64,000 nt of DNA from Ascoidea asiatica JCM 7603 (lineage: Eukaryota; Fungi; Ascomycota). Numbering within the stretch: position 1 is the stretch's first letter; every line of letters starts with the position of its first letter. Shown here piece after piece: positions 3,122 to 53,621 of the stretch. The DNA lies in the NCBI GenBank assembly GCA_001600695.1, contig BCKQ01000021.1:1-64000 (forward strand). Direction: 5' to 3'. The notes under the pieces are model-generated. The model worked only from the letters and a program-made list of their open reading frames with translations, did no database searches and was not told the origin of the DNA. A program made the translations under genes and the position numbers.

Positions 3122-3625
3122 ATGAATGGTGGTAATATGGGACCATATATTAATGGTGGTAATATTGGACCATATATTATTGGAAATGTAATTAAATTAA
3201 AAACAAATGGTATTGAAATTTATGCAAAAAATTTTATTTAAAATAGTGAAAAATCAATTAAAATTATTAATGTTAATGAAATTAAAAATGAAAGTAAATT
3301 AATGAATGAAAAATATAAAAAAATTATTAACAAATCCTCATTTTATTAATTATTATAAACTTATTCAAAGTAATAGTTCATATAGAATTGTTAAAGATTA
3401 TATTTCAAATAATAATAATCTTCATTATATAATTAAAAAAAATAAAAATAAACATAAAAATAACAAGAGATTTGGTCAATTGATATTATTTTATATGAAT
3501 TAATTACAAGAAATTTATCAAAATCATTGAATGAACAATATAAAGTCAAATTTCCTGAAGGTATTATACTTAATCCATTAATTATTGATTTAATTCAAAA
3601 TATTCTTAATATTAATTCATTCATG
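3122..3625 (+). pseudogene. Decayed Ser/Thr protein kinase remnant
   Basis: Collinear fragments: IGPYIIGNVI..IYAKNFI*NSEKSIKII (subdomains I-II, stop at 3239); frameshift to LLTNPHFINYYKLIQSNSSYRIVKDYI (III-V); then from 3464 QEIWSIDIILYELITR..YKVKFP..IIDLIQNILNIN (IX-XI). No HRD/DFG/APE. Confidence 0.7.
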
Positions 3626-4274
3626 GTTTCTCGAGAGAAGACAGAACAATGCAAACTCAGGAATAAAAGGACAAAATATGTCCTGGATCTTTCCTTGTCC
3701 AAGATGGAGACCTATTCTCGGACAACCTTTATAACCAGGATTGAGAAAGATCCCATTAGCGCAAACTCTGCGTTGTCTTTCCTTTCCGGATACTTCTGCG
3801 CTGTTTGTGCCACGGTGGCCTTTAACAATTTGTTGGTTATGCGTGAAACACGTGCCTTAATTTTTTATTTTCTTCTGCGCGCCGTACTGCGTATCCAGGG
3901 ACCTGGGTCATTCATTTCTACAGTTTTCAGCCTGAATTGTGGCGTAGAGTGTGTGCTTACGTAATTATTTACTTTGTTTTGTTTACTTTTTGTTGAATCA
4001 AAACAAAGTGAGATGTAATTAAATCACTACAGTAAGTTTACGTTATTTAGTTTTATTTTCTTATTTTTTTATTTTTTTATTTTTTTATTATTTATTTATT
4101 TATTATCTTGAATATATTAATCAATCCATTGATTAAAAACATTTTTTAGATAAATTATAATATATTTATAAAATAAAAAAAAAATCAATAAAAATTATAT
4201 ATATATTCAATAATATATAATTCTTATTCTTAAATACCCTTTTTTTTTTTATTTTTTAATCAATTTTTAAAAAA

Positions 4275-7200
4275 ATGCTTGATGATCTATCATATCTTCA
4301 ACCAAGTAAGTAAATTATATCATATTACTATATTATATTATATTAAAAGAATATATCATTCTAACTAACATTTCTTTAATTTTATTCCATTTAGATTTTA
4401 ATCCAAAAACTTTAAAAGTTGCTCAATTAAGAAGTATATTCGTTGAACATGAAATTAATTATCCATCAAATGCAAAAAAATCTGAACTTTTAAAAATTTT
4501 TGAAGAAAAAATTAAACCAATTTCAAAACAAATTTTAAAAAATTATAATTCTATATTACCTAATGATAATGGTATTTTAAATGTTAATGATCCTAATAAT
4601 AATAATTATATTAATGATATTAATGTTGATGATACTATTATAAATATTAATAATAATAATATTAATAATAATAATCCAAGGACTCCAACTCCTGAACCAC
4701 AACCTGATTTACATGTTGAAAAATTAAGAAAATCAAGATCAAGATCTCCAAGAAAATCTTCAATTCCTTTAACTACTAGAATAACAAGATCTAAATCTCC
4801 AAGAAAAGTATCAATTAAACAATCTGAAAAACCTTTAGATATTAATGAGACTAATATACAAGTAAATAAAAGAATAACAAGATCAAGATCTCCAAGAAAA
4901 GTTTCAATTAAAGAAAAAGTATCCTTAATTCCAAATCAAATATCAAATGATAATCAATTAATTAATGAAATTATTAATGATAATGATAATGAAAATGATA
5001 ACTCCAATATTTTAAAACCTAAATCTCCAAAAAGATTAACTTCTTCAACAAAAAGATCTCCATCTCCAAAGAGATCTCCAAGAAGATCTCCAAGAAAAAA
5101 AAGAGTTACAAGTTCTAATTCAAATAATCTTGATACTGAAATTGAAAAAGAAAATAAAAACAAAGAAATTGAAATAAAAAATGAAAAACCAATTGAAATA
5201 TCAAATGAAAATGAAATTGAAAATGAAAATGAAAATGAAATTCAATTATCAAAATTAAATCCACAAGATAATCAATTATTAAATACAAATTTAAAATCAA
5301 ATAAATTGACTAAATCTAATAAAATAATTAAAGTAAATAAAATAACTAAAAATAAATTATCAACAAGTAGAAAATCTTCAAAAAAATTGAAAAAACCTTC
5401 TCCATCTCCAACTCCCACTCCAGAACCAGATCAAGTACCTGAAAATGTAATTGAGAAATTACCAGAATTAGAAAATCTTGAAAATAAAAAAATTGAAATT
5501 CCAAAACAACATATATTAAAACCTACTAAACAAATTAAAGAATCATTAGATCAAAAACCAAAACTTGAAATTGAAATTGAAAATGAAATTGAAAATAAAA
5601 TCAAAAATGAAAATCAAGAAAAAGATTTAATAAGTAAAACTCCAATATCTTTAAATTCAAAAAATTTAATCACTGATATTAAACAAGATTCTGTTTTTTC
5701 AACAAGAAATTCATTTCAATTATTTTCTTCTTCTCCTGATTCAAAATCAAATTCACATTCAAATCATAAAAAAATTAAAAAACGTTTAATTGATGAAGTT
5801 GAAAATGATGATAAAATAATTAGTTCATTTTCACATTCAAAAAATTCAAAATTAAATCAAATTTCTGTACCTAAAAAAATTCAAAAGAAAAATAATAATA
5901 ATAATAATAACAATAATGAAATTAAACAAATGAATTCATTTCCTTTAAGTTCTGACGATGAAGAAAGTGAAGTATTTATTAAATCAATCAATAAAAAACA
6001 AAATGATAATAATAATATTGATAATTATAATAATATTGATAATTATAATAATAATAGTAATAATAATGATATTAATATTGATGATGATTATGAGAATGAT
6101 AATGATTATCAAAAGACTCCATCTCCTTCAAAGAAAAATAAAATATTTAATAAAAATTTAGATTTATTTAATACTGATGAAAATATAGATAAAGAAGAAG
6201 ATGATGAATTATTTAATAGTTTTATGGCTGTAACTGAAGAAAACAATTTAAAAAGAGAAAAAAAAAAAGAAAAATCTGATGATTCTTTAATTGATAAAAC
6301 TATTTCAAATAAAAATAAAAAACCTAGTGGCTTTAAACCAAATTTTGCAAATTTAATGAATCAAGGAATGATGGAACAATTAGGTATAACTGTTCAAGGT
6401 AAAGCACCTCCAATTTCTTTTGCTCCAAAACAAGTTTCAACTCCAATTAAAAAAAGAGAAAACTTTAAAAATGAAGAGAATATTATTCAAAATGTAAATA
6501 ATAATTTTCAAAATGAAAGAAAAAATTCATCTTCTATTGATAATTCTAAAGTTTCAATAAAACAAACACCTAATAAAAATTCAGTGAAGAATACTCCAAA
6601 GAAAAAAGAATTTCTAGTTTCAAAGAAAAAATCAGATAATTTTGGAAATATTAAAAGAACTCCACTTAAAACAGTATTTAATACAGAAAGTATGTCAATT
6701 AAAAAAGAACCAAGACTTTCATTTCCTTCAATTCCTAGAGTTACAAAAGATGAAGTTAAAATTCAAAAACCTTTGATAACTAAAGAAGATTTGCCTCCAA
6801 ATATAAGTATATTAAGAGATGAAAAAACTATTTATTTAGATGCTGATGATATTTTAGGAAATGAAACTTTTAGATCTATAAAAGCTGAAAATAAATCTTC
6901 ATATCTTGAACCAGATGAAGATTTTGAACCTGAAGATATGGAAGAAATTAAAGAAATTAAAGAAATGGAAGAAATGGAAGATGATGAAGATGATGAAACA
7001 TTTTATCCAGAAAATACAGAAATTGATTATTCATCAGAAGATGATATAGATTCTATGGAATATAATGAAGAGAATAAAAATGAAGAATTTAAAAAAATTA
7101 AAAATTTACTGATTGAAAAAGTGAATAAAATAAAGATTCCAAGTTTAATAAAACCTACAACATGGAAAGATTATTTTAAACAAACAATTTGTTTATTTTT

Positions 7201-8646
7201 ACTTGGATTATTTATGTTTTTAATAATTTGGTATCGTAAACAAGTTATTTTAGTTGGATTTTGTGGTAATTCAATTGATAAACCATTATTTGAAGAATAT
7301 TATGGTGATGAAAGATATGAAAGAATTTATCCATATTTAGAAAAAATTGAAAATTTTTATCAAGAAAATTTAAGACCAAATTGTATTGAATGTCCTTTAA
7401 ATTCAATTTGTTTTAAAAAACTTGAAATGAAATGTCAAGATGATTTTATTTTAGAAATTTCACCATATACATTAAATGGATTAATACCAATTCCATCAAA
7501 ATGTATTCCAGATAGAAAAAAAGCTCATAGAGTTCAATCAATGATTGATTTTTCATTAAGTTTATTAAGAAGTAAAAATGCAGGAGTTAATTGTGGTCAA
7601 GGAACAGATGAAGAAGCTGGATTAACATTAACAGAGCTTCATGATTTATTATTTAAAATGAAATCAGTAAGTTATTTCTACTATTTTTTTTTTTTTTTTT
7701 CATCCAAATTTAAAAAATCAATTATACTAACAAAGTTTTTTTATTTTTTTTATTTATTTTATTTATTTTTAGCCTTTAATATCTAATGAAGAATTTCAAG
7801 ATGTTTGGTCAAAAGCTTCAATAGAAATTGAAAATCAACCAGAAATAAGTGTAAGGCAAGTTTTTTAAGAATTTTTTCTTTTTTTTTTTTTTTTTTTTTC
7901 TTTTATTATCAAATTTTGGTAATTATTTATAAAACAATCTTACTAACTATAAATTTATTTTTTATTATTTATTTTTATTATTATAGGTTTACCATGTTGA
8001 ATATAGAGACACCATTGATGAAGAAGAATCCAATAACAACAATATTAAAGAAATCCAGGCGACAAATATTCAAACAAAGACAAAGACAAAGACAAAGACA
8101 ATTACAACGACAACAACAACAAAAACAACAACAACTGGTTTTCGCTCATTATCCAATTCAAACCTTAACTTTACCTGTCGTTCAAAATTATTAATAAATT
8201 CAATAATTGAGAAATATAAATATGAAATAATTTTAATAATTTTAATAATTTTAATTTTTAATTTAATAATTTATAAATATAATATTTATATTAAAAGAGA
8301 GAAAAAAATTAAGGATATAAATAATATAATAATAAAATTTTTAAAAAATCAATTAAAGAAATATTTAAAAGATGAAAGTGGATTAAGTAAAAATTATATA
8401 TCATTAATTGATTTAAGAAATTTAAATTTAATTAATGAAAATGGTAAAGAGAAAAAAATAATTTGGGATAAAATTGTTGAAAGAATTGAGAAAAATTCAA
8501 ATATTAGAGCACATTCAATGGAAGTTTATGGAGAAATTATGAGAACATGGCAATGGATTGGAGATATTGAGGATATTGAAGAATTAGAAGAATTTAATAA
8601 ATTTAAAAATTCTAATGAATCTAATAAATCTATTGGTGGTATGTGA
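4275..8646 (+). CDS. SRC1: Inner nuclear membrane LEM/HeH-MSC protein Src1/Heh1; 4 exons (4275-4305, 4395-7666, 7773-7850, 7987-8646), 1346 aa long isoform
   Basis: Spliced N-terminus MLDDLSYLQPNFNPKTLKVAQLRSIFVEHEINYPSNAKK is a HeH/LEM domain. TM1 is followed by a luminal Cys motif (VGFCG, PNCIECPLNSIC, CIPD). The last exon has TM2 and the MSC terminus EVYGEIMRTWQWIG. All junctions keep frame. Confidence 0.92.
4306..4394 (+). other. SRC1 intron 1
   Basis: GTAAGT donor, AACTAAC branch-like site at 4363-4369, TTAG acceptor; splicing restores the LEM domain. Confidence 0.9.
7667..7772 (+). other. SRC1 intron 2
   Basis: GTAAGT donor, TACTAAC at 7725-7731, T-rich tract, TAG acceptor; phase 0. 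Confidence 0.9.
7851..7986 (+). other. SRC1 intron 3 with two overlapping donors (GTAAGG at 7851, GCAAGT at 7856)
   Basis: TACTAAC at 7941-7947 and TAG acceptor ending 7986. The 7851 donor gives the full MSC frame. The 7856 donor gives an alternative frame open to TAA at 8192-8194. Confidence 0.85.
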
Positions 8647-9337: not shown

Positions 9338-9650
9338 TTTTTTTTATTATTGATAATAATAATCAGAATATTAAATGAATTGAATATAAGTAATGATACT
9401 GAAATATGTATATATGTATAAATATATTGAATTGAATTGAGTTGAATCAAGATCAAGATGAGATTTGATTGTTTTTTGTTGATTCAAATAAAGGTTTATT
9501 CTCAGTGATTACTTTGTTATTATATTTGTTATTATATTATTATATTATTGTTCACTGCTTGAATCTGGCCAATAATCAGGCAGACAGTGGATCCGGCGGT
9601 CCGGAGCACGGAAATGAGAGTAAATCAGCGCGGATGTAGACTGTTTCCGT

Positions 9651-9673
9651 GTTACGTAACTGATTACGTAATC
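9651..9673. promoter_or_regulatory. Two adjacent palindromic bZIP-type sites (GTTACGTAAC, GATTACGTAATC) in a divergent promoter
   Basis: Perfect 10- and 12-bp palindromes with a TTACGTAA core, in a GC-rich island upstream of GTR2. Confidence 0.5.
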
Positions 9674-9812
9674 TCGCCAATTTTGAATTTAAATAAAACC
9701 AAAACAAACAAAGAAAGAAAGAAAGAAACAAAACAAAACAAAAGAAGATATCTGAGAAGAAAGAGAAGAAAGAGAAGAAGAGAGAGAAGAAGATAATAAA
9801 GATAATCTCATA

Positions 9813-11231
9813 ATGTCTGAAATGGATGCTGATAATACATTTGGCGATAATACATTTGGTGATAATGTATTTGGTGATAGTGAAACTATAGATGATCAAC
9901 AAAAACCAGATGCAAGAATAATTTTAATGGGTTTAAAAAGAAGTGGAAAAAGTTCAATAATTCAAACTGTATTTTATAATGCTGAACCTTATAATACTAT
10001 TTTATTAGAAACAACTTCAAAACCAGTTTCTTTTATTTTTGAATCTTTAATTAATCTTCATATAACTGAATTACCTGGTCAAGTTGATTATTTTCAAAAA
10101 TATTGGGATCAATTTCATACTTCAAATACTTTTGAAAATGCAAATTCAATAGTTTATGTAATTGATTGTCAAGATGAATATATGGCTTCTGTAAATAATT
10201 TTTTAAATATAGTTTCATATACAACTGATATTTCTCCAAATGTGAAATTTGATGTTCTTATTCATAAAATTGATGGATGTCCAGAAGATTTTAGAGATGA
10301 TATAGTTAGAGAAATTCAAGAAAAAATTAATTATTCTTTATATTCAATTGGTAAAGATACTTTAATAGATTATCATGCAACTTCAATTTATGATCAAAGT
10401 ATTTATGAAGTTTTAAGTATAATAATTTCAAAATTAATACCAAATTTATCTTCTTTAGATAATATCTTAGATCAATTGGTTTCTCATTCAAAAATTGAAA
10501 AAGCATTTTTATGTGATATTAAAACAAAATTATATCTTGTTACTGATTCAAGTCCATTTAGACCTGATTTATATGAACTTTGTTCTCAATATATTGATTT
10601 ATGTGTAGATTTAAATAATCTTTATGTTACTAAAAATAATGATAATATTATTGCTGATGAAAAATTAGATAATGATTATAATAATCAATTTGTCCAAGAA
10701 AATAATTTTTATAATAATAATAATAATAATAATAACATTGATGATAATGAGAGTGAAAATAGTAATGATAATGATAATGATAATGATAGTGAAAGCAATA
10801 ATGACAACCAGGGTGACAATTATACTAATACAAGTTCAAAAAATTCTCTCAATAACAATAACAATAACAATAACAATAACAATAATACAAATAATAATTA
10901 CCATAATGATAATGATTATTTAAAAAATTCTAATAATAATAATAATAGAATTGAAGAAATTTCTTCATATTGTACTTTATTACCAGATATGAAAGTTTAT
11001 TTAAAACAAATGTTAAATACAATGTGTTTAGTTACTTATATTAAAGATGATAAATTAAATGATTCTTTAAATGGTCAATTAGCTTTAGATTTTAATACTA
11101 ATATTTTTCAACAAGGTTTATCTAAATTAATGAAAATTTCAAAAAAAAATATGGAAAATGTTGATGATTTTATGGCAAAACAAATTAAAATTAAAGATAT
11201 TAAAAATAATAAAAATCTTTCAATGAATTAA
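9813..11231 (+). CDS. GTR2: Rag GTPase Gtr2 (RagC/D)
   Basis: ILMGLKRSGKSSI P-loop, ELPGQ, IHKIDG, TSIYDQSIYE, IEKAFL roadblock domain with an Asn-rich insertion. Confidence 0.93.
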   Translation: MSEMDADNTFGDNTFGDNVFGDSETIDDQQKPDARIILMGLKRSGKSSIIQTVFYNAEPYNTILLETTSKPVSFIFESLINLHITELPGQVDYFQKYWDQFHTSNTFENANSIVYVIDCQDEYMASVNNFLNIVSYTTDISPNVKFDVLIHKIDGCPEDFRDDIVREIQEKINYSLYSIGKDTLIDYHATSIYDQSIYEVLSIIISKLIPNLSSLDNILDQLVSHSKIEKAFLCDIKTKLYLVTDSSPFRPDLYELCSQYIDLCVDLNNLYVTKNNDNIIADEKLDNDYNNQFVQENNFYNNNNNNNNIDDNESENSNDNDNDNDSESNNDNQGDNYTNTSSKNSLNNNNNNNNNNNNTNNNYHNDNDYLKNSNNNNNRIEEISSYCTLLPDMKVYLKQMLNTMCLVTYIKDDKLNDSLNGQLALDFNTNIFQQGLSKLMKISKKNMENVDDFMAKQIKIKDIKNNKNLSMN

Positions 11232-13445: not shown

Positions 13446-14723
13446 ATGACTGAGAATAGAAATGGGCCTGTGAGAGTACCTTACAAGAGAATCACTGATG
13501 ATGATTTATACAGAAACTCAACTCAATATAGACTATGGTCTTTTACTCAAGAACAATTAAATAAACAAAGAATTCAAATTAATTCAAAAGGTAAAACTAT
13601 AGTTTTAAATAAACTTAAAGAATTAGCAATAAAAAATAAAGATATAACAAATTATGAAACTTTACTTAAGAAATTAGATATTGTTACTGTAAAAGAAGAA
13701 TTAATGGAAATTCATTATTATTCAAGACGTGTTGAAGAAGTTGCAAATATTTTTAAATTACCAATTCAAGTTAAAGCTACAACTTTAATTTTTTTAAAAA
13801 GATTTTATTTAACTCATAGTGTTATGGAATTTCATCCAAAAAAAATTTTATATACATGTTTATTTTTAGCTTCAAAATCTGAAAATTGTTTTATATCTTT
13901 AGATTCATTTGTAAATCCATTAAAAAATATTTCTAAAGATATTATAACAAATTTAGAATATAAAGTTTTAGAATCTTTAAAATTTTCTTTATTAACTCAT
14001 AATCCATTTAAACCATTATTTGGTTTTTTTTTAGATTTTCAATCAATTTTAATTAATCATCATCCAATGGGTGTAATGGTTTTTAAAAAAAGAAAAAATA
14101 ATGAGAATGAATTTAAGAAAAAAAGAATTAAATATTCAATTGAAGAAATTTTAAAAATTTATGAAAATTCAAAAAAATTTATTAATGAATCTTTAATTAG
14201 TGATGTTTTATTTTTATTTACACCTCCACAAATTGCTTTAGCTTGTTTAATGGAATCTAATGAAGAAATTACAAATACATATTTAATTTATAAATTTAGA
14301 AAAATTCGAAAACAATCTATAAATTCTAAAGATCCAAAAGATTCTAAAGGTCCTGAAGCTGATGAAGATCTTGATATTGATCTTGGTATTAATATTAAAC
14401 CTGATAATGATAAAGAAAAAGATAATGAAAAAGAGAAAGAAAAAGAGAAAGAAAAAGAAAAAGAAAAAGAAATAGATAATGCAATTGGAATTGAATTAAA
14501 TAAATTAGTTTCAAAAATTGAAAAATGTAGAAAATTAATGAAAGAATCTTATAATCCTTCAGTTCCAGAAGCAACAAAAATTGATAAAAAAGTTTATTAT
14601 TGTATTTCTCCACAAAAATTATTAAAAAATAAAAAAAGAGAATTAAATGAAAGTGGTAATAGTAATAATAATAATAATAATAATAATGATAATAATAATA
14701 ATAAAAGGGTAAAACTTGAATGA
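13446..14723 (+). CDS. CCL1: Cyclin H, TFIIK subunit
   Basis: DDLYRNSTQYRLWSF, KRFYLTHSVMEFHPK, CLFLASKSEN, FLFTPPQIALA. Confidence 0.95.
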   Translation: MTENRNGPVRVPYKRITDDDLYRNSTQYRLWSFTQEQLNKQRIQINSKGKTIVLNKLKELAIKNKDITNYETLLKKLDIVTVKEELMEIHYYSRRVEEVANIFKLPIQVKATTLIFLKRFYLTHSVMEFHPKKILYTCLFLASKSENCFISLDSFVNPLKNISKDIITNLEYKVLESLKFSLLTHNPFKPLFGFFLDFQSILINHHPMGVMVFKKRKNNENEFKKKRIKYSIEEILKIYENSKKFINESLISDVLFLFTPPQIALACLMESNEEITNTYLIYKFRKIRKQSINSKDPKDSKGPEADEDLDIDLGINIKPDNDKEKDNEKEKEKEKEKEKEKEIDNAIGIELNKLVSKIEKCRKLMKESYNPSVPEATKIDKKVYYCISPQKLLKNKKRELNESGNSNNNNNNNNDNNNNKRVKLE

Positions 14724-14805: not shown

Positions 14806-15264
14806 TTATAAATGTTTTAAAGCTTCAAATCTTTTTTTTAAATCATCTAATTCTGCATCTTCTTTATTTTTCTTACTCATTGATTTAGAATTATTTATAC
14901 TTGATTTAATTGTTGATTTTGTATTTGATTTTGTATTTGATTTACTTTTTTTAATTTTCTTTTTCTTTTTCTTTTTATCTTTATCTTTATCTTTATTATC
15001 TTTATTATCTTTATCTTTAGTATCTTTATCATTAGACAGTTTAATTAAATTTTTATCAATATCTTTTGGAATTTTAATTTTTGGATTTAAATTATCAATT
15101 GATTTTGAAGGTGGTTTAACTTTTATTGGAATATCATCAATTGGATTATCATTTGAATTACTTAAAACTTCTATAGCTTCTGGAATTATATTTTTTTTTT
15201 TTTTTTCTTTATTTCCTCCATCATCATCACTATCAAATTCGTCTTCATCACTATCAGACAGGTC

Positions 15265-15304
<40 letters not shown>

Positions 15305-15882
15305 GTTAATTCAGAAAATGGAGCATTATAAGTTCTTGCAATTTCTTTTAAATATAAAATTATTAAATCTTCAGAAAGTGATTTTAATAAAGTTCTATTT
15401 ATAATTTTCTCAGGTATTATATTATCTTTATTATCTAAAGCATTTTTACTAAATTCAATTCCATATCTATGTATAAAAATATCTTTTAAAATAAATAATT
15501 CTTTAACTTCAGTATGAGAAGCAGAATAAATTATAACTTTTATAGCTTCTTCTAAACTTGGATCACAAGAAGTATTACCAATACTATTATTATTACTATT
15601 ATTATTACTATTATTATTACTATTATCAATTAATAAACCAATTCTAGCTAATAATAATTCACAATATAATTCTAAATATTCAAGTAATTCAATATATATA
15701 TCATCTCTGATAATGTTCTCAACTCTTATTTTGGCACTTAATTCTCTGTTATTCTTCAATAAATCTGCAATTTGTCTTCTTTCTTGTTTGGCCATTGCAG
15801 TTTTCTTTGTTTGCATGAATCGCAACTTGCTGATGGTCATCTTCAATGTGATCTTTAGCTTTGATTGTAAATTGGGTGGCAT
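14806..15882 (-). CDS. IST1: ESCRT-III-associated protein Ist1
   Basis: SAKIRVENIIRDD, LELYCELLLARI, and C-terminal MIM LDDLKKRFEALK. Confidence 0.95.
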
Positions 15883-16006: not shown

Positions 16007-16114
16007 TCCATTCATCTTCTCTCTTCTCTCTTCTCTCTTCTCTCTTCTCTCTTCTTTCTTCTTTCTTCTTTTGTTTCTTTCTTCTTTCTTCTTCTGCTCT
16101 CCTATTCACTGCCT

Positions 16115-16158
16115 TACAACTGTAGTACAACTGTAGTACAACTGTAGTACAACTGTAG
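16115..16158. repeat. Perfect 11-bp repeat (TACAACTGTAG)x4
   Basis: Four exact copies with a near-palindromic unit. Confidence 0.9.
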
Positions 16159-16833
16159 TATTCAAGCATTGTCCCGCTTAAGCAGGTACTTATCATACAT
16201 TACAATCCACTGCACTAACAACACTCACCACACTATCCCACTTCCCTGTCTCTTTCACGCCACTTTCCTCTCTGGCCACCCTCACGCGGCTGTCTTTTCT
16301 CGTTTCTTGCCACTCGAAACCATCTGAAAACGTCTTTTAAAATATATTCGCTTAACTTTACAAAAAATACCTTTATTTTTATTTTCTTATTTATTTTCTT
16401 ATTTATTTACTAATTCATTTTACTTCTTTTATATCAATTATCACAATCATTTTGTCAATACTGTAGACACCAATCCAAATAATATTTAATACTGAAAGTT
16501 TGAAAGTTTGAAAGTTTGAAAGCTTGAAAAATTATTATTATTTCTCTGATTTCGATATACTTTACTCTACTTTACTTGACTCATTTTCTTTATGTCATTT
16601 CTTTATGTTTAATTATTATATTTTTATTCTTTATTTTACTAAAGAATTAAAATGTTTTAAAAAAATTTATCATTGAAAACTTAACTAATCACTTAACTAA
16701 TCAATTTATTGCTTTTACTTTCATTTTATTTTATTTCATTTCATTTCATTTCATTTTATTTCAAATATTTCATCAATATTTAAATCGCTTAAAGTACTCG
16801 AATATATACTGTATATTTATAAAAAAAAAAAAA

Positions 16834-19800
16834 ATGAAAAAAATGAAAAAAATAAATTTAAAAAAAATTTATTCAAATTCAATATCATATTTTAAAAAAA
16901 ATTATCCAATTGATAAAATCTTAGCAAGAAGAATATTTAAATGTGTTTTAAATTCAACAATTTGTTTAATTTTATGTTTAAATTCAAATGTTAGATCTCA
17001 TTTAGGTTCTGAACCTTCAATGCTTGCTTTAGTTTCTGTAATGGTACATCCAGGTAGAAGATTTGGTTCAATGATTGAAGGTTCTTTATTTTGTACAATT
17101 GGTTTATTATTTGGTAATTCATTTTCATTATTTGCAAGATTTTTATCACAAAAAATTTTAACAAAAAATTTTTTAATTTATAATGATTTACAATTATCTT
17201 TATTACCAATTGCATATAAAAATTTTCAATCTTCTTTAGCTTTATTAAGTATTTTTGAAATTATTATGCTTTTTATTCATGGTTGGATGAGAAGTGTATT
17301 TCATAAATTTTTTAATATTGTTTTTCCATTTTTCTTAGTTGTACATTTTACATTCCTTGATGATATTAATAAATCTGCAAAAGAAATCTCAATGGCTTTC
17401 ACAATTCCATTCTTCTTAGGTATCTCAATCTCAATATTTATAAATATTTTAATTTTTCCAGAATTTGGTACTTCTTATCTTGGTAATGCTTCAATTAATT
17501 CTTTTAATAATTTACAATCAACTTTAGATAATTCAATTTATTATTTCTTAAATATTTCTAATATCTCAAATAATAAAATAGATAATATTGAAATATCTGA
17601 TAATAAATCATTAAATTCAATTAATTCATCACCTTATAATAAATTAAATAATAATTTAAATTTTAAAAATTTATCAAATTTATTTAAATTTCAAAAAAAT
17701 TTTAAAAAAAATTTATCAATCTTTAATTCTGTTTTACAAGAATGTATTTATGAAATTTCTTATTCATTTTTATCTCCAAATGAATTTAATTCAATTTATA
17801 ATAATTTAAATAAATTATCAAATCATTTAACTGCTTTAATAAATTCTTGTCAATTAGAATTTTCAATTTTAATAAATTATAATAAATTTAATCAAAAAAA
17901 TGATTTAATTTTAAATTTTATTAAAAAAATTTTAAATTCAACAATTAATTTACATTTAAAAATTAATCAAATTTTATATATTATTAAAATTTTAATTTCT
18001 TATTCTTTTGATGTTAATAATAATAATAATTATAAAAAAAATAATAAATTATTAAAAAAATCTAAAATTTTTAAAAATTCAATTAATAATAATATTATTA
18101 ATTTATTTACTATTGAAAATTTAAATTTAAATAAATTTAATTTAAATGATCAAATTAATCAATTATTAAAATCTTTATCTTTATTTGATCAATCTTGGTC
18201 TTCTGCTTTAAAAGAATTTAATATTCAAATTTTAAATAATGATATTAATAATAATAATAGTAATAGTAATAGTACTACATCTTTAATAAATAAAAAAGAT
18301 CATGAATGGTTATTACCAAGAAATGAAAATTTCTTATTTTCTTCATTTTTCTTAAATTTAAAAGAAATCACAAATTTAATTTGTTTTATTTTAAAAGAAA
18401 CTTCAAATTTATATCAAATTAGAAAAAAAAGAGAATTAAAAAAATTTAATGGTAGAAAAATTTGGTTTTCATTTTTAACAAATAAAAAATTATTTAAAAA
18501 TTGGTTTAATTCTCATAATGATATAATAAAAATGAATGAAAATATAAGTATTGCAGGTGGTGCAACTCAAAAAATTAATTCAATAAGTAAAACTCCAAGA
18601 AGAAGACCAAATGATATTGAAAGTAGAATTTTACAATCAATGAAATCAAAAATTCAAACTAATTCTATCAATTCAAATAATAATTTAAATAATAATTCAA
18701 ATAATAGCAATATTAATAATTCAAATAATTTAAAAAAAAGTTCTTCACATATTATTTTTGATGAAATTTCTTCTTCTGATGATGGTTCTTCTAATTTTAA
18801 AATTTTTTATCTTTTTAGATATCTTTATCCAAATAATATTCTTATATTAATTAAAAAATTCAATAATAGATATCATCATCATATTTTATTTGGTTTTCAA
18901 GTTACAATGGCTTTAATGTTAGCTTCTTTTCCAATGTTTATACCACAATCAAGACATTGGTATGTTAATATGAGAGGTGCTTGGATTGGTTTTGTTTGTA
19001 TTTTAACTTTAGAACCTTCTGTTGGTAATACTTTCTTTGTATTTTTCTTAAGAGGTGTTGGTGTTATTCTTGGTGCTTTTTGGGGTTATGTTAGTTATCA
19101 ATCTGCTTATCATCAAAAGTTTCCTGTTATTGAAGTTATAATTACAATAATTGGTGCAATTCCTGGTTATTATTATTTTATTGGAACTCCATACGTTAAA
19201 GCTGCAATTATTGGTGTTATATCTATATATATTGTATTACTTTCCAGTGCTTTACCATCTACAATTGGTGGTTCAATTGGTGAAAATTTTGGTAAAAGAT
19301 GTTTTGCGGTTGCTTATGGTGGTATCATTGGTGTAATTTCAAATACAATAGTATTTCCAGTTCGTGCAAGAAATGAATTAGTTTCAGAATTAGCTTTTAT
19401 CACTAGTTCTTTAGGAAAATTAGAATTATTATATGCTTCTGCTATTGAAAATGAAAAAATTTCACTTGCTTTACCAGATGAAAGATATGATAGTTTTATG
19501 ATATTATCAAAAGAAATTAAAACTGCATTAAGTAGAGCAGAAGCTTATAAACAAGCAGCAAAAAGAGAACCAAATTTAAAAGGTGATTTTAAAGAAAATG
19601 AAAAAGTATTCACTGAAATATTATTTGTTTTAAATCAAATTATATCTAGAATGGATAATATGGCTTTAACAAGAAGACATTATGGATCTGCTGTAATTGA
19701 AGAATTAAATGATATTGCTCATCCTTATAGAAGGCAATTAGTTGGCTGTATTCATAATTCTTTTAAAGCTATTCAACAAGCTTTTTTAACTAAAAATCCA

Positions 19801-20790
19801 TTACCTCAATATCTTCCAAGTGCTAGAGTTAGTCATAGAAGATTAATAAAAATTGTAAATGAAGAAATTTCTAAAAATTATATATCTTTAAAATCTCAAA
19901 AACTTAAAGAAAAAGAGATTGCAGAAGATACAGAAAGTGAATACACAAGTGATAATGAAGAAGATGAAGATGAAGATAATTTACATTTTGAAGTTTCTCG
20001 TAAAAAAAGAGATTTTCAACCTAAAAATATAAATTCTCAGTCAAAATTTACTGGATTCATTGCTGATGATGAACATGATGGACTTGATATTCTGAAAGAA
20101 AAATTTACTGGTTGGAGTGCATCTTGTGCAGGAACCATGGAGATTATTGAATATATTGAAGAATTAATTGAGTTAACTAAAATTTTAGTTGGAGTCAATG
20201 AATTTAAATATGGATTTTTAAGTCGTCCATTATATGATGATTGGGCTATTAATTCAATTATGGGGTATAAAGATTTTGTTGGAAAAACTGGTAAAGGAAT
20301 ACCAGTTTCAGTTGAGAATTCAAAAAAAAAATTTACAGTTGATAGAAACTCAACAGATTTGGATGAAGCTATAATTGATGACAGTGAAGAAGATGCCGAT
20401 TTATCTGATAATGTGTCTGAGGATGATGAAATTTCCCCAAATAAGGCCAATGATGTAGGTAAAAAAGTTCACAAAGCGCCTGTAGCTTTTACAATGCATT
20501 CTCCTATTATTCCTCAAGAAAATCCCAAAGGCAGAAGATTGAGTATACAATCAATGGCAAGTGGAGCAAGTAGAATATCAGGGAATGTTCTTCAGCGTAT
20601 ATATTCCTTCAGGGGTGAAAAAACTGGGAATCAAAAGGACCTTTTCGGTTTATACTCTAGAGGAAGTTCTTTCTCCTCGGAAACATCAGGATCTTTTGAT
20701 GATTCAGATGATAACTCGTTTGACGAAAACTTGCCATTGGCCTTAAGGAAGGTTATTACAAGAACTGCTGCCAATAATCTTAAGAACTGA
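16834..20790 (+). CDS. Aromatic-acid-exporter/FUSC-family membrane protein (YGL140C/Bre4-like)
   Basis: Two TM bundles; VMVHPGRRFG, LTLEPSVG, FPVRAR, AKREPNLKGDF, PLPQYLPSARV. Confidence 0.85.
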   Translation: MKKMKKINLKKIYSNSISYFKKNYPIDKILARRIFKCVLNSTICLILCLNSNVRSHLGSEPSMLALVSVMVHPGRRFGSMIEGSLFCTIGLLFGNSFSLFARFLSQKILTKNFLIYNDLQLSLLPIAYKNFQSSLALLSIFEIIMLFIHGWMRSVFHKFFNIVFPFFLVVHFTFLDDINKSAKEISMAFTIPFFLGISISIFINILIFPEFGTSYLGNASINSFNNLQSTLDNSIYYFLNISNISNNKIDNIEISDNKSLNSINSSPYNKLNNNLNFKNLSNLFKFQKNFKKNLSIFNSVLQECIYEISYSFLSPNEFNSIYNNLNKLSNHLTALINSCQLEFSILINYNKFNQKNDLILNFIKKILNSTINLHLKINQILYIIKILISYSFDVNNNNNYKKNNKLLKKSKIFKNSINNNIINLFTIENLNLNKFNLNDQINQLLKSLSLFDQSWSSALKEFNIQILNNDINNNNSNSNSTTSLINKKDHEWLLPRNENFLFSSFFLNLKEITNLICFILKETSNLYQIRKKRELKKFNGRKIWFSFLTNKKLFKNWFNSHNDIIKMNENISIAGGATQKINSISKTPRRRPNDIESRILQSMKSKIQTNSINSNNNLNNNSNNSNINNSNNLKKSSSHIIFDEISSSDDGSSNFKIFYLFRYLYPNNILILIKKFNNRYHHHILFGFQVTMALMLASFPMFIPQSRHWYVNMRGAWIGFVCILTLEPSVGNTFFVFFLRGVGVILGAFWGYVSYQSAYHQKFPVIEVIITIIGAIPGYYYFIGTPYVKAAIIGVISIYIVLLSSALPSTIGGSIGENFGKRCFAVAYGGIIGVISNTIVFPVRARNELVSELAFITSSLGKLELLYASAIENEKISLALPDERYDSFMILSKEIKTALSRAEAYKQAAKREPNLKGDFKENEKVFTEILFVLNQIISRMDNMALTRRHYGSAVIEELNDIAHPYRRQLVGCIHNSFKAIQQAFLTKNPLPQYLPSARVSHRRLIKIVNEEISKNYISLKSQKLKEKEIAEDTESEYTSDNEEDEDEDNLHFEVSRKKRDFQPKNINSQSKFTGFIADDEHDGLDILKEKFTGWSASCAGTMEIIEYIEELIELTKILVGVNEFKYGFLSRPLYDDWAINSIMGYKDFVGKTGKGIPVSVENSKKKFTVDRNSTDLDEAIIDDSEEDADLSDNVSEDDEISPNKANDVGKKVHKAPVAFTMHSPIIPQENPKGRRLSIQSMASGASRISGNVLQRIYSFRGEKTGNQKDLFGLYSRGSSFSSETSGSFDDSDDNSFDENLPLALRKVITRTAANNLKN

Positions 20791-25934: not shown

Positions 25935-27313
25935 TTGAAGAAAGAAGATGTATTGAAATATTAATTATTGAATATATTTGATTTTTGTTTCTTTTCCTTA
26001 AAGTCTTTTTGAATATGTATATAAATAAAAGATTATATACTTGAATATATATATAGATATATATATATATATATTATTTCTTGGATATAAAACCTGTGAT
26101 ATGGAGTATGAATAAAATTAAATTATACCCAAAAACTAGTTTATTATTAGCCTGAATCGGTAATTGAAATTGATAATAAATGAGATAAAATGTAAGTTAA
26201 AGCAATGAAAATATTTTCAATTCCCATTTGGAATAACTTATTTCATTAATAATTGATTGAATGATTGAATAATTACAATTTCATTGATGAAAATAATACT
26301 TAAATATTCTAATAATTAAATAATAAAAAAAAATCATGAATTGAATTGATCAGTTTTAAATAGTCTAAAATCGGCTATAACCAAAGCTAAAAATCTAAAA
26401 AGCTAAATATTAGAGGCAATGCCAAATTTCCAATTCTTTTTCACACTCCAAAACTTAGAAACTCAGAAACTCAAAAATTCAGCATTAGAACGAAAAGAAA
26501 AAGCATTGAAAAGAATTCCAGAGTTGTTTAAGATTCATTTCCAGCAGCATTTACACCTTCTTTTGTCTTTGATTCTTAGACTTTGTGCAAGTTAGCTCAG
26601 GAAGTGGCAAATTTATTATCTTCTTTTGTTGTTTATCTCCTTCATCTTCTCAGACTTGTTTTCTCGCCCACCGGTACCAGACTCCAGTATTTTATCGCCA
26701 GGCACCGTTATTTGGCACTTTTATATAGAAGCGGAAAGAACAGAGCCGAGAAACGTCCCATAACACTGGTACTCAAGAAACAATAACAAAAAATTTAAGT
26801 TATACGACGCGTCCTGGTGCACCTAAATTATGCATTTCCAAGCGTACTTTTAGTGCTCAGCCACATTTTTTTAAGTTAAAATATCCCAAAATATTCAGTG
26901 AAGATTCAGTTTTACGATTTTTAACGAACAAAATTATCAAGATTCAAAAACACAATCGAACAGAGTGAATTGTTCGCTTTAAACTTCTGATCTATACGAC
27001 AACGCAAAACTAAACTATTCTTTCAATGTTTAAATTTTCGAGATTTCAAAAATGCGTCGCCAGAACTGGGGGTGTTTTTATTGAAATATTTATGTGACTG
27101 ATTTTTCATTTATTTGATGAATTTATAACTACGAATGAGTGAATGAATGAAATATATAAAAAGTTATAATTGATTGAGTTTATTTGATTTAAATGAACAT
27201 TGAATTCAATCATAATTACTTTGATAAATATATTATCAATTATATTCATAAAGTGATCATTTCAATTGGATAAGAAATATCATTCATTTTAATTTCATAA
27301 CACTTAAAGAAAA

Positions 27314-32531: not shown

Positions 32532-32604
32532 GGTTTGTTGGTCAAGTGGTTACGACGCTTCGTTTACACCGAAGAGATCGCGAGTTCGAACCTCGCACGA
32601 ATCA
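32532..32604 (+). tRNA. tRNA-Val (anticodon TAC)
   Basis: Cloverleaf: acceptor GGTTTGT/ACGAATC, anticodon arm CTTCG-TTTACAC-CGAAG, T arm GCGAG-TTCGAAC-CTCGC; followed by a T-run terminator. Confidence 0.95.
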
Positions 32605-38098: not shown

Positions 38099-38504
38099 TG
38101 TAAGTATTTTATTATTAATAAATTTCGAACACAATCATTCTATGAATAATATAAATAAATGAATGATAATCTAAAAGAAATAAGAAATAATTTATAAGAA
38201 ATAATAAACCTTTGTGATGAAGACTGATAGATCCAAACAAATGATTGATATATTTCAAACAAGGACTGTATTAAATATTAAATATTTATTATTTATTATT
38301 TATTATTTATTATTTATTCATTATCTATTATCAATTATCTAGTATCTATTATTTATTATCATTTATTTATCATTTGGTACTTATTGAGTAGAGAACGAGT
38401 GGAATAAATGGCAAAGGTTCCCCTGTTTATTGATTGATTATCGAGAGCGAAGCAGTACTGGAGTAGCAGTGCTTAGTTAACAGTCAGTTACCGGAGAGTC
38501 TAGC

Positions 38505-38580
38505 TGCTGGGAGTGCTGGGAGTGCTGAGAGTTAAGCACTGAGAGTTAAGCACTGAGTGTTAAGCGCTGGGAGTACTGGC
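38505..38580. repeat. GC-rich compound minisatellite (GCTGGGAGT and CTGAGAGTTAAGCA units)
   Basis: Read directly in the ALY2/ALD divergent promoter. Confidence 0.7.
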
Positions 38581-39312
38581 CGCTTGTAACGGTATGAGAA
38601 ACAGTTCCGGTGAAAGAAAGAGACACCGCGCCACGGAGACTGCTGGTTCCACAGGCGGATACAGCACACCCAGCACTTCCACGGCACAAGCAATACTAGC
38701 CACTTGTTTTGATTACATAACAGCATGTGATACATCCGATATATTTCTCTTTTATGCTTTTTCTCCTTTTTCTAGCCAAACAATCTCGATAATCAATTTC
38801 GATAATCTCAGATCAATACAATTGCACTATCAAGAAATTATCCCATCTTCCAAAAACGGGGGCCCACTATATACTGCCAAAAATGCGTGGTCCGGGACCA
38901 TAGTAATAAGCTAAATCATATGACATATAAAGGTAGTCCCGTTTTTAAGGGTTTAAAAGTGTTTAAAAAAATTATTTGGATTAATTTGAGGTTTTTGTTC
39001 CTGTTTTAGAAACAACGTTTACTATGTAAAAAAGAAGATTTTGAGGTGGTATTTAGCGTTTCTGGCAGTATATAGCGGTTCACCAAAAACGGAAGTAAAC
39101 GCTTTCTCTGTAAACTTATTCATCTTCAATAGAGTAACTGAAATAAATATTAATAATCACTTATATTCAGTAATTTTACTCAATGACTTCCCTAAATTGA
39201 CGTTTTAGTTAATTTTATTCAAATATAATTGAAAATTATACTCAAATTATGAAATTATATATATATTAATCAATATGTAACTTTTGTTAATTATTAATTC
39301 CATTCTATAATA

Positions 39313-44638: not shown

Positions 44639-45127
44639 TTGAGATACGAGATGATTCAAGGATAGAGAAAAGATAAGAAATGGGAACTATGAATTATTTA
44701 TTTGCTTTAGTTAATGGGATAAGAAAAAATGATTTGGATATTAATCAAAGATATATTATTGATTGATTAGATATGATTATCTGATTATTTACATATTGAT
44801 TATATATTATTTATACTATCTACTACAACTATCAATTATATCTATTATTTACTGGTTCTTTCTCAGATGCTTTGATTCGATGCAAAATCCTCGGAAAAGT
44901 GGTGGTGCACAGGCAGATAACACTAACAGCCACTGCGACTAGCCCTCTCCGCTATTTGCCTGTGTTTTTTGTCTGTTTCTTTTGACTGGCCTTTATTATA
45001 ATGGTGATTGAAGAGAAATTTGAAAGTATTTGAAAGTATTTAGAAGAGTATTTGAAAGAGTGTTTGAACAAGTATTTGATGAAGAATTATGAGTATATTT
45101 CACTAAACAGGGAATATATTTGCATTG

Positions 45128-47997: not shown

Positions 47998-48652
47998 AAT
48001 TTTAAAATTTATTTATATATACCTGTTTTACTTCTTCTTCTTCTTCTTATTCTTCACTTTTGTTTTTTTCTTCTTTTGAAATAAGGGGGTTGTCCCTGAA
48101 TTTATATCATTATTGAAATAGTGAAGTCCCTGTTTACCTGTCTTCCTGTATATTTGACATTTTTGATTACGAATCCAATCCAATCCAATTCACTCCACTC
48201 AATCTCTTAACCTAATTATCATTGCTAACCTTTTTTTAAGCGCCTTTTTGATCTGATAAGAAAACGAGAACAGTGAAAGTCTTCACCTAAAAAAGTCAGT
48301 GCTGCTGCTCGGCAACCCCAGCTAATCACTGCCCGCGCGGCTAATGCCAAAGTAAATCTAAGCTCAAAGACAAAAAAAAGTGCTGGAGCTCAGTGGCAAT
48401 TGATCGATCTATTTGAGTAAAAAAAGAATTTGAATTTGATATATTTAAAGTGTTTAAACTATGGAATAAAATCTATCTAAAAGGTAAAATATAGTCTAGT
48501 TGAGTGAATCACTCTGGAAATTAGTATTATATAGCATTGGATTTGAACTCATCACAGTCAAAAGAATGGGGGACTTGAAGTGTGAAGAAAGAATCAAAGA
48601 GTGAAAGAAAATGAAATAGGAATAGTAGAAGTAGGTAACATCAATTGATAAA

Positions 48653-51139: not shown

Positions 51140-51960
51140 TTTTTACTTGTTAGCCTTAAACATTTGAAATTTGAATTGAATCCTTCATTGCTTCTTAGTT
51201 GATTCTACTTTTATTATTTTCATTCAAAATTTTAATTATCAATTCTAGATGAAGTATTAACAAAAAAAAAGAGAGAGCAAAATTTAAAATAGATAGAAAC
51301 TAATAGTTAACTGTTATACTGATACTAAAAGTAATATATTATTTTTCAGTATAAAATTTGGATTTGCATGTTAATCTTCGAGATAAACTCATATTCCTTA
51401 ACAAATTATTCAAAATGACAAAACAATTTCTTGGAATCGAGAGAAGACGATCCGAATGGAAACAGAAAGAGAAAAAATGCAGCTTGCTATGGAGCTATAG
51501 CCGACGGGTAAACTCTAAGGAAACAGGTACGGAAAATACTCGGATAAAAATACATAAATCCGTCTCGGAGCAGTTTCCCAAAAGGCCTACAAGCAGCCGA
51601 GCCGAGCTTCAGGGTTCATTATTGCATTCGGTTCGGAAAGAAGTAAACGCAACTTGACGAAAATTTATAAATTTGTCATAACGCAACTTCAGAACGTAAT
51701 TTTCGAATGTAACGCATCTCTTTTGGGACGTAACTCCTTTGGGACGGAGAAAAAAAAGTTAACCACCTGCCTAAAATTGTTATTACCACCATGATGGGTT
51801 TATTACGTAATATGTTGAAATTTTTGAAACGGGTTTATTTTACCCGCAATGGAACCTTTTCGGCCCGTAGTCATAGATTTTACCATAACCCATACATACG
51901 TTAGAAGAGAATAAATATAAAAATTTATGAATATTTGATATGAAGATTTAATATGAAGAA

Positions 51961-52752: not shown

Positions 52753-53621
52753 TTCTCTTTCTCCTTTGTTGAACTGAACTGTTTATCATTTTATTATTTA
52801 TTTCAATATTCATTTCACTCTTTATTTCTTTATTTCTTATCACTGATCCTAAATTTCATTTCATGTTTCCAGAAACAGGACACCGCAAAGAGAATTCTCG
52901 GATTCCTGCTGTTGTTGGCCTTTGTTTTGTTTGTTGACAGTCACGCAAACCTCAGCCTGTTCCCCTCTGCAAACGGGCGGATGGAGCAGACTTGCTTTTT
53001 TAGCTTCAATTTAGAACTCTCTCAGCTATCACAAAAATATCAATGAATTAATAGCAATAAATAAATAGTAAATAATGATAAAGACTGTAAAAAGAGTGTA
53101 AATCACTTATCTCGAATATTTATCTCGAATATTTATCTTGAATATTTATCCAACATTTGTATTTTCATTGACATTGGCATTGATAGATATAGACATTGAC
53201 ATTGAAATTGACATTTAACCGAGTTGAATTTTGTTTATTTGAAATAATTATCATCATTTATTGTAAATTAATCAATAATCAATAATCAATAATCAATAAT
53301 CGATAATAATAATTAAAATTTAAATAAAAGAAACAATTGAAGACTAATTAATAAGCATTTTTATATAGTTGATTAACTTATTTTAAAATATTAGCAATTT
53401 CTATACTTAATTTATCATACTTGAATTTTTTCAATATGTAAAAAAAATTATTACAAATTATTCAAACTCTTTTAAATAATACAATAATTATTCAACTTTT
53501 GATTAATTTTTCATTTCTTTTCTTCCAATTTATATTCAAAAAAAATTGAATTAATATTTTATATCAATTATATATACTCTTGATAAATTCATACTACCAA
53601 AACACTTTTAAAACATTTATA

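What the first reader, a model, noticed from the sequence alone, without database searches (positions are those of the whole stretch)
7845..8194. SRC1 alternative 5' splice sites with reversed order and a dual-coding exon
Seen: the donor region AGT|GTAAG|GCAAGT offers a GT donor at 7851 and a GC donor at 7856. GT gives a 1346-aa protein with TM2 and the MSC domain. GC adds 5 nt and reads a 69-residue alternative tail (RFTMLNIETPLMKK...RQRQRQ...LPVVQNY*) that stops at 8194, just before TM2 (1197 aa). This stretch is stop-free in two frames and less AT-rich than the rest of the exon. Established: S. cerevisiae SRC1 uses GCAAGUGAGU, where the GC donor 4 nt upstream yields the Hub1-dependent short isoform. 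Here the GC donor is 5 nt downstream, yet +5 and -4 give the same frame shift. Inference: the same short isoform is preserved by a rearranged splice architecture. SRC1 splicing has been studied in other yeasts, so novelty may be partial.
Basis: partly seen in the sequence, partly recalled or inferred. Interest (0 to 1): 0.8.

Follow-up and report, generated by a model that had tools for sequence, protein, structure and literature searches.

The report
SRC1/HEH1 gene with competing donors
This is the nuclear-envelope gene SRC1/HEH1 of a very AT-rich budding yeast, carrying the two overlapping splice donors that let yeasts make a long and a short protein from one gene; the arrangement is real, but it is the common form and was published in 2020.

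Summary
A four-exon HeH/LEM + MSC gene (4275-8646, + strand) has GTAAGGCAAGT at 7851-7861. It offers a GT donor at 7851 (1346 aa) and a GC donor at 7856. The GC donor gives 1197 aa: a 70-residue basic tail that stops at 8192-8194, 30 nt before TM2.

The +1 frame stays open for 68 codons (P about 0.003-0.005). The dual-coded stretch is 31% GC against 16% for the rest of the exon.

The same 11-mer sits at the same junction in seven other yeast species. All read a 40-48 aa basic tail that ends before TM2. In three of them, codon-position variation shows selection on the alternative frame. The tail shares two motifs with the Heh1-S tail derived from a Saccharomyces locus.

"Reversed order" is not new. 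Hurtig et al. 2020 (PMC7491326) reported the truncating GcAaGU donor at +5 in Y. lipolytica, C. jadinii and C. auris. They treat -4, the S. cerevisiae form, as the derived state and make the same multiple-of-three argument.

Verdict: a new member of a known kind, of low interest.

The parts
4275..4305 (+). Exon 1 (ATG at 4275; MLDDLSYLQP + first base of the N codon)
   Evidence: ATG...CAACCAA|GTAAGT. Joining it to exon 2 gives a continuous HeH/LEM start (..NFNPKTLKVAQLR..).
4306..4394 (+). Intron 1 (GTAAGT ... CTAACTAAC ... TAG), 89 nt
   Evidence: donor GTAAGTAA, branch CTAAC 30 nt from the 3' splice site.
4395..7666 (+). Exon 2: HeH/LEM domain (about 4403-4507), long low-complexity nucleoplasmic region, TM1 (7187-7234), first half of the MSC domain (7199-7666)
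   Evidence: Pfam HeH E=1.4e-16 and MSC E=3.5e-39 (model positions 2-148). Searches give the coordinates.
7667..7772 (+). Intron 2 (GTAAGT ... TACTAAC ... TAG), 106 nt. Shared in position with locus L005, absent in L001-L004, L006 and L007
   Evidence: The join ..LFKMKS|PLISNEEF.. aligns with the relatives' ..LLSMKAPYITIEEF...
7773..7850 (+). Exon 3, 78 nt (PLISNEEFQDVWSKASIEIENQPEIS); extended to 7855 (+VR) if the GC donor is used
   Evidence: colinear with the ..EFEELW..ELEKEPEII block that precedes the alternatively spliced intron in all relatives.
7851..7861 (+). Competing 5' splice sites GTAAGGCAAGT: GT donor at 7851 (long form), GC donor at 7856 (short form)
   Evidence: The identical 11-mer is at the orthologous junction in L001-L007. 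It occurs only twice in the 20.3 Mb genome.
7851..7986 (+). Intron 3 (136 nt from the GT donor, 131 nt from the GC donor); branch point TACTAAC at 7941-7947; 3' splice site TATAG|G, the first AG after the branch point
7987..8194 (+). Dual-coded part of exon 4. Frame 0 reads the lumenal segment of the long form; frame +1 reads the basic tail of the short form (FTMLNIETPLMKK...LPVVQNY*), with alternative stop TAA at 8192-8194
   Evidence: 68 open +1 codons (P 0.0025-0.005) and 31% GC against 16% downstream. Tail motifs are shared with relatives and with Saccharomyces.
8074..8133 (+). Microsatellite (ACAAAG)4 + (ACA/ACG/AAA)n inside the dual-coded part. It reads TK/T-rich in frame 0 and RQ/Q-rich in frame +1, and accounts for the extra length of the tail
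   Evidence: alignments show it as an insertion relative to the other species.
8224..8274 (+). TM2 (EIILIILIILIFNLIIY), present only in the long form
7987..8646 (+). Exon 4 coding sequence of the long form: second half of the MSC domain (8035-8562), stop TGA 8644-8646
   Evidence: MSC E=3e-34, model positions 163-336..

Best explanation
The locus is the single SRC1/HEH1 (Heh1/Lem2-type, HeH/LEM + MSC) inner-nuclear-membrane gene of a very AT-rich budding yeast. Its last intron starts with two competing, overlapping 5' splice sites, GUAAGG and GCAAGU 5 nt further on. Splicing at GU keeps frame 0 and yields the full-length two-pass protein, with TM2 and the winged-helix half of the MSC domain. 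Splicing at GC keeps 5 more nucleotides and shifts the next exon to frame +1. That yields a one-pass protein ending in a basic 70-residue lumenal tail, without TM2 and without the Chm7-binding part of the MSC domain. By homology with S. cerevisiae Heh1-S, the short form would restrain ESCRT (Chm7) recruitment by the long form. Shown here: the gene model, the motif, the two open frames, conservation of the motif and of the alternative frame in other yeasts, and the single-copy status. Inferred: that the GC donor is used in this organism, the isoform ratio, Hub1 dependence and the cellular role.
For: Domains: HeH and a split MSC domain. It is the only MSC gene in the genome. The intron position and the 11-mer GTAAGGCAAGT are identical in seven other species whose introns are otherwise different in sequence. 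In all eight loci the GC donor reads a 40-70 aa tail rich in K and R that stops before TM2, while frame +2 stops within 2-18 codons. In relatives L005-L007 the dual-coded stretch varies least at main-frame position 3, which is alternative-frame position 2 (mismatch 0.395/0.347/0.218). Downstream the pattern is the usual 0.358/0.216/0.637. That is the signature of selection on the alternative frame. The window's tail shares the motifs RRxIF and (I/V)FxxxPxxTL, in the same order, with the 49-residue short-form tail derived from a Saccharomyces locus carrying GCAAGTGAGT. Alternative-frame similarity to Saccharomyces, L005 and L007 has z about 2.5, while the main frame of the same nucleotides has z about 0. 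Stop avoidance in the window has P = 0.0025-0.005. An NCBI annotation of one relative (P0003, locus L002) models exactly the GC-donor short isoform. Literature: RNA-seq shows +5 GcAaGU use in Y. lipolytica, C. jadinii and C. auris (PMC7491326). The Heh1-S-specific residues are conserved and functionally required (bioRxiv 10.1101/2020.06.25.171694).
Against: About 20 of the 68 open alternative codons come from a microsatellite that is open in all frames. Tail similarity is modest (p about 0.03) and is partly forced by the overlapping conserved main-frame motif FRSxSxxxL. No close relative was available: the best homologue is 50% identical in the conserved domain, so loss of GC-donor use in this lineage cannot be excluded. 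GUAAGG is a good donor and may dominate strongly.
Confidence: 0.8

Rival explanations
1. The GCAAGU at +5 is not used as a donor in this species. It is retained only as intronic context of the constitutive GUAAGG donor (for example for U1/U6 pairing), and the open +1 frame is a by-product of main-frame constraint plus a microsatellite.
For: No RNA data. The microsatellite contributes 20 open codons in all frames. The second tail motif overlaps the conserved main-frame FRSxS block.
Against: The first tail motif (RRQIF) lies where the main frame is not conserved (QATNIQT here against KRHIPEE or TDIPKQK elsewhere). Outside the repeat, 48 codons are still open, P about 0.01 by my arithmetic from the stop density. 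The genome has no second SRC1/HEH2 gene that could supply a short form. Published RNA-seq shows use of the same motif in three species.
Confidence: 0.1
2. The GC donor is used, but the product is splicing noise or an unproductive, NMD-prone transcript (stop 452 nt before the normal stop) with no protein function.
For: Many alternative splice products in S. cerevisiae are non-productive (PMC3983031, title and abstract). The short mRNA would carry a long 3' UTR.
Against: The codon-position pattern in relatives shows purifying selection on the alternative frame. The position of the alternative stop just before TM2 is conserved in all loci. In S. cerevisiae the short protein exists and its unique residues are required.
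Confidence: 0.07
3. A truncated protein comes mainly from retention of intron 3 rather than from the GC donor. Read-through gives ...PEISVRQVF* (1132 aa).
For:: intron retention stops after 5 codons and would also give a TM1-only protein. An intron-retention isoform exists in the ZT clade.
Against: This would not explain the conserved open +1 frame in the next exon or its motifs. The intron has strong branch and acceptor signals.
Confidence: 0.03

Closest known systems
SRC1/HEH2 orthologues of Yarrowia lipolytica, Cyberlindnera jadinii and Candida auris (Hurtig et al. 2020, RNA 26:1464, PMC7491326)
   Same: The truncating 5' splice site lies 5 nt downstream of the full-length site. GcAaGU is the motif at +5. 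The downstream exon is read in two frames, and the short form is truncated.
   Different: This gene is much longer (1346 aa). It has two extra introns, one only 78 nt upstream of the competing donors. Its tail is lengthened to 70 aa by a microsatellite. Usage is not shown by RNA.
Saccharomyces cerevisiae SRC1/HEH1 (GCAA/GUGAGU; Heh1-L 834 aa, Heh1-S 687 aa; Hub1-Snu66 dependent)
   Same: Same gene family, same intron position (after ..EPEI..), same GCAAGU hexamer and same frame shift. The tail motifs RRxIF and FxxxPxxTL are shared with a Saccharomyces locus.
   Different: There the GC donor is 4 nt upstream of GUGAGU; here it is 5 nt downstream of GUAAGG. S. cerevisiae also has the paralogue HEH2, while this genome has one MSC gene. 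Hub1 dependence was not tested here.
Ogataea polymorpha duplicated unspliced SRC1 genes (one full-length, one truncated; PMC7491326)
   Same: The same two protein products are needed.
   Different: There they come from two genes; here a single gene would have to make both by splicing.
Aspergillus fumigatus SRC1/HEH2 orthologue (alternative 3' splice sites; PMC7491326)
   Same: A frame shift of the downstream exon gives a truncated isoform.
   Different: It uses competing acceptors, not donors.

Membership tests
Heh1/Src1/Lem2-type LEM-MSC inner nuclear membrane proteins | N-terminal HeH/LEM domain | tested here: met
   Pfam PF12949, E=1.4e-16, residues 3-37 of the exon 2 translation.
Heh1/Src1/Lem2-type LEM-MSC inner nuclear membrane proteins | C-terminal Man1-Src1p (MSC) domain | tested here: met
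   PF09402 model positions 2-148 in exon 2 (E=3.5e-39) and 163-336 in exon 4 (E=3e-34). Exon 3 fills the gap and is colinear with the relatives.
Heh1/Src1/Lem2-type LEM-MSC inner nuclear membrane proteins | Two transmembrane segments flanking a lumenal domain | tested here: met
   Hydrophobic stretches ICLFLLGLFMFLIIWY (7187-7234) and EIILIILIILIFNLIIY (8224-8274), identified by inspection. No dedicated TM predictor was run.
SRC1-type competing 5' splice sites producing long and short isoforms | Intron at the conserved position after the ..EPEI.. block, between TM1 and TM2 | tested here: met
   Same position in L001-L007 and in the Saccharomyces locus L011.
SRC1-type competing 5' splice sites producing long and short isoforms | Two overlapping donors, one of them GCAAGU, offset by +5 or -4 (a shift to the same frame) | tested here: met
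   GTAAGGCAAGT at 7851-7861. The published definition is in PMC7491326.
SRC1-type competing 5' splice sites producing long and short isoforms | The alternative frame of the next exon is open and ends before TM2 | tested here: met
   68 open codons, stop at 8192-8194, TM2 from 8224.
SRC1-type competing 5' splice sites producing long and short isoforms | The short-form tail is homologous to the Heh1-S-specific segment | tested here: inconclusive
   The motifs RRxIF and (I/V)FxxxPxxTL are shared in the same order. Local alignment z is about 2.5, p about 0.03, against Saccharomyces, L005 and L007, and is not significant against L001-L004.
SRC1-type competing 5' splice sites producing long and short isoforms | Both junctions present in RNA | not testable with these tools
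SRC1-type competing 5' splice sites producing long and short isoforms | GC donor use depends on Hub1 binding to Snu66 | not tested
   Known only for S. cerevisiae (PMC12830679). Testing it here needs genetics.

The most novel reading that the evidence does not exclude
In this lineage the competing donors sit at the end of a 78-nt exon created by an extra intron, and the short-form tail has been stretched by a microsatellite that inserts an RQ/Q-rich block between its two conserved motifs. GCAAGU differs by one base from GUAAGU, the donor of this gene's two other introns, and it follows an exon-like AAG. The GC site could therefore be used more efficiently, or regulated differently (for example without Hub1, or coupled to exon-3 definition), than in S. 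cerevisiae. Separately, in a 20% GC genome the dual-coded stretch stands out as a local GC rise. If that holds generally, it would offer a sequence-only way to find overlapping reading frames in such genomes.
Probability: 0.15. Interest if true: 0.35.

Novelty: new member of a known kind. Interest (0 to 1): 0.2.

Why it matters
[quoted passage not shown] Stop codons are frequent in off-frames of a 20% GC genome. The 68-codon open alternative frame here is therefore the sharpest single-species stop-avoidance signal among the eight +5-type loci compared (P about 0.003 against 0.06-0.33). That modestly strengthens the case that the short isoform is a selected product. It opens no new question. 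For annotation, this gene needs two models, including a GC-AG intron.

Tried and rejected

(2) The search for homologous proteins on the MSC part of exon 2 found nothing at E<=0.001. This is a limit of its word index; the exhaustive HMMER search then found 357 homologues.

(3) The search of earlier findings near the locus and by words returned nothing relevant. The genome-wide look-up only indicated a budding yeast, from its MAT notes.

(4) I considered the 45-49% GC island at 3613-3992 as an unannotated structured RNA. It has no Rfam match even at E<=1, is single copy and has a weak fold z of -2.05. Similar unique GC-rich islands lie between many of the window's long ORFs. It is more likely promoter or regulatory DNA.

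(5) The second genomic copy of the 11-mer (G000:C3:2002398-2002408, minus strand) was tested as a possible second gene with competing donors. It has stops in all frames around it and is a chance match.

(6) A further GT at 7849 (GTGTAA) was considered as a donor. It lacks G at +5 and would shift to frame +2, which stops after 3 codons. I rejected it.

Exons were searched one by one by reference. Joins were made only inside local scripts, to count residues and read frames.

Full report
**What is there**

The window is about 20% GC. Between 4275 and 8646 on the + strand lies a four-exon gene: exons 4275-4305, 4395-7666, 7773-7850 and 7987-8646. All three introns have TACTAAC-type branch sites and TAG or ATAG acceptors. 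Introns 1 and 2 start with GTAAGT.

Exon by exon, Pfam finds an N-terminal HeH/LEM domain (E=1.4e-16). It also finds a Man1-Src1p C-terminal (MSC) domain split between exon 2 (model 2-148, E=3.5e-39) and exon 4 (model 163-336, E=3e-34). The gene is therefore an SRC1/HEH1 (Heh1/Lem2-type) inner-nuclear-membrane gene. It is the only MSC gene in the 20.3 Mb assembly. Earlier notes on the same genome mention MATa1 and MATalpha2, which fits a budding yeast.

**Check of the observation**

The exon 3/intron 3 boundary reads AGT|GTAAG|GCAAGT, with GT at 7851 and GC at 7856.

- The GT donor gives 1346 aa (stop 8644-8646).
- The GC donor adds 5 nt and gives 1197 aa, ending ...LPVVQNY with TAA at 8192-8194.
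- TM2 is encoded at 8224-8274, so the short form lacks it.
- Frame +2 stops after 3 codons. Retention of intron 3 stops after 5 codons.
- The dual-coded stretch is 31.2% GC, against 16.2% for the rest of exon 4.

A +1-frame run of 68 codons at a fixed position has P = 0.005 in 19 long ORFs of the window, and P = 0.0025 from this gene's own off-frame stop density. Twenty of those codons belong to a microsatellite (8074-8133) that is open in every frame. The remaining 48 still give P of about 0.01, by my arithmetic from the stop density. The tail is 70 residues if the junction V is counted.

**Relatives**

An exhaustive HMMER search with the TM1-MSC part of exon 2 found 357 homologues, the best 50% identical. 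I fetched genomic loci for seven of them, L001-L007 (L008 duplicates L007).

- All carry the identical 11-mer GTAAGGCAAGT at the same junction, after ..EPE(I/V)x. Their introns are 52-129 nt long and otherwise differ in sequence.
- In every one the GC donor leads into a 40-48 aa tail rich in K and R that stops before TM2.
- For L004 the first AG lies only 6 nt after the branch site. The deposited protein model (P0004) implies the next AG, 3 nt on. Both keep the frames.
- Protein P0003 (the gene model at locus L002, NCBI assembly GCA_036884685.1) matches the GC-donor short isoform I derived. It has S where I read L at a CTG codon, which suggests a CUG-Ser yeast.
- Among the 150 best representative homologues, 46 are unspliced ORF calls that read VR(Q/H)V across the junction, the translation of GTA-AGG-CAA-GT. 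Nineteen read WRQ, the translation of the Saccharomyces-type TGG-AG|GCAA|GTGAGT.

The +5 arrangement is therefore the commoner one in this sample.

**Is the alternative frame selected?**

In the three mutually closest relatives (L005-L007), pairwise mismatch by main-frame codon position in the dual-coded part is 0.395/0.347/0.218. In the single-coded remainder of the exon it is the usual 0.358/0.216/0.637. Main-frame position 3 is alternative-frame position 2, so the alternative frame is the more strongly constrained one there. Hurtig et al. report the same.

I also fetched a Saccharomyces locus (L011). I take it for Saccharomyces from the N-terminus of its product, P0086. It has GCAAGTGAGT, and the short-form tail I derived from it is 49 residues, the number given for Heh1-S.

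That tail and the window's tail share RRxIF and then (I/V)FxxxPxxTL, in the same order. At the first motif the main frames are unrelated, which points to constraint specific to the alternative frame. Local alignment of the alternative frames gives z of about 2.5 (p about 0.03) against Saccharomyces, L005 and L007. The main frames of the same nucleotides give z of about 0. Against L001-L004 the main-frame FRSxS block dominates instead. This support is modest, not decisive.

**What is already known**

S. cerevisiae SRC1/HEH1 has /GCAA/GUGAGU. GUGAGU gives Heh1-L. The upstream GCAAGU gives Heh1-S and needs Hub1 bound to Snu66 (PMC12830679). Heh1-S restrains Chm7 recruitment by Heh1-L and needs its 49 unique, conserved residues (bioRxiv 10.1101/2020.06.25.171694).

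Hurtig et al. 2020 (PMC7491326) state that:

- C. auris and C. jadinii carry GcAaGU at +5;
- the site moved from +5 to -4 in the Saccharomycetaceae and again in C. albicans;
- shifts by multiples of three argue that the tail sequence matters.

The window shows the common arrangement, and S. cerevisiae the changed one.

**Mechanism proposed**

The two donors compete during spliceosome activation. GUAAGG differs at +6 from GUAAGU, the donor of this gene's two other introns. GCAAGU differs from it at +2 and follows an exon-like AAG. Choosing GU gives the two-pass protein with the Chm7-binding MSC winged helix. Choosing GC gives a one-pass protein with a basic lumenal tail. The genome has no second SRC1/HEH2 gene, so any need for both products must be met by splicing. 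The use of the GC site, the isoform ratio, the Hub1 requirement and the role of the short form are inferences from homology.

**What could not be done**

No close relative was available. Joins were made only in local scripts, to count residues and read frames.

**Verdict**

It is an ordinary member of a published class. Features particular to this gene are its size, intron 2 lying 78 nt upstream of the competing donors (shared in position with L005) and the microsatellite-lengthened tail. I give it low interest (0.2), and 0.8 confidence that the GC donor yields a short isoform.

Noticed in passing
window 3613-3992, 9500-9734, 16080-16387, 26536-26865, 38358-38801, 44810-45048, 48170-48453, 51417-51751, 52815-53063: Unique, non-repeated GC-rich islands (40-56% GC, 230-450 nt) in a background of about 20% GC. 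Most lie between the long ORFs of the window, often just upstream of one (for example about 280 nt before the SRC1-like ATG). They look like promoter or regulatory islands. The one at 3613-3992 has no Rfam match and is single copy.
   Followed up: partly
window 7667-7772; L005:2217-2273 (approximate): Intron 2 creates a 78-nt exon just before the competing donors. L005 has a short (about 57 nt) GTGAGT...TTACTAAC...CAG intron at the same position, read through in frame in its ORF call. L001-L004, L006 and L007 have none.
   Followed up: partly
window 8074-8133: An (ACAAAG)4 + (ACA)n microsatellite inside the dual-coded segment. It is tolerated in both used frames: TK/T-rich in the long form, RQ/Q-rich in the short form.
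   Followed up: partly
proteins P0021, P0030, P0033, P0037, P0039, P0043, P0064: Homologues in which ..EPEIIVRQV.. runs on in frame into the full-length C-terminus (..LRSTSLS..). Either an in-frame, stop-free retained intron (as described for the ZT clade), an intron loss that kept the donor-derived codons, or unspliced annotation.
   Followed up: no
L002 (NCBI GCA_036884685.1), protein P0003: The deposited gene model matches the GC-donor short isoform, not the full-length one. A CTG codon in the tail is given as S, which suggests a CUG-Ser clade yeast.
   Followed up: partly
G000:C3:2002398-2002408 (minus strand; locus L012): The only other copy of GTAAGGCAAGT in the genome. It lies in sequence with stops in all frames and is judged a chance match.
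   Followed up: yes
window 32532-32604 (+): tRNA-Val (anticodon TAC), the only Rfam or ARAGORN hit in the window.
   Followed up: no
window 9813-11231 (+), 13446-14723 (+), 14806-15882 (-), 16834-20790 (+): Neighbouring ORFs: a Gtr1/RagA GTPase, a cyclin, Ist1 (a Vps4 regulator) and an ArAE_2_N/FUSC_2 membrane protein. The Anp1 gene that lies 3' of SRC1 in L001, L002 and L004 was not among the flanking ORFs scanned here.
   Followed up: no
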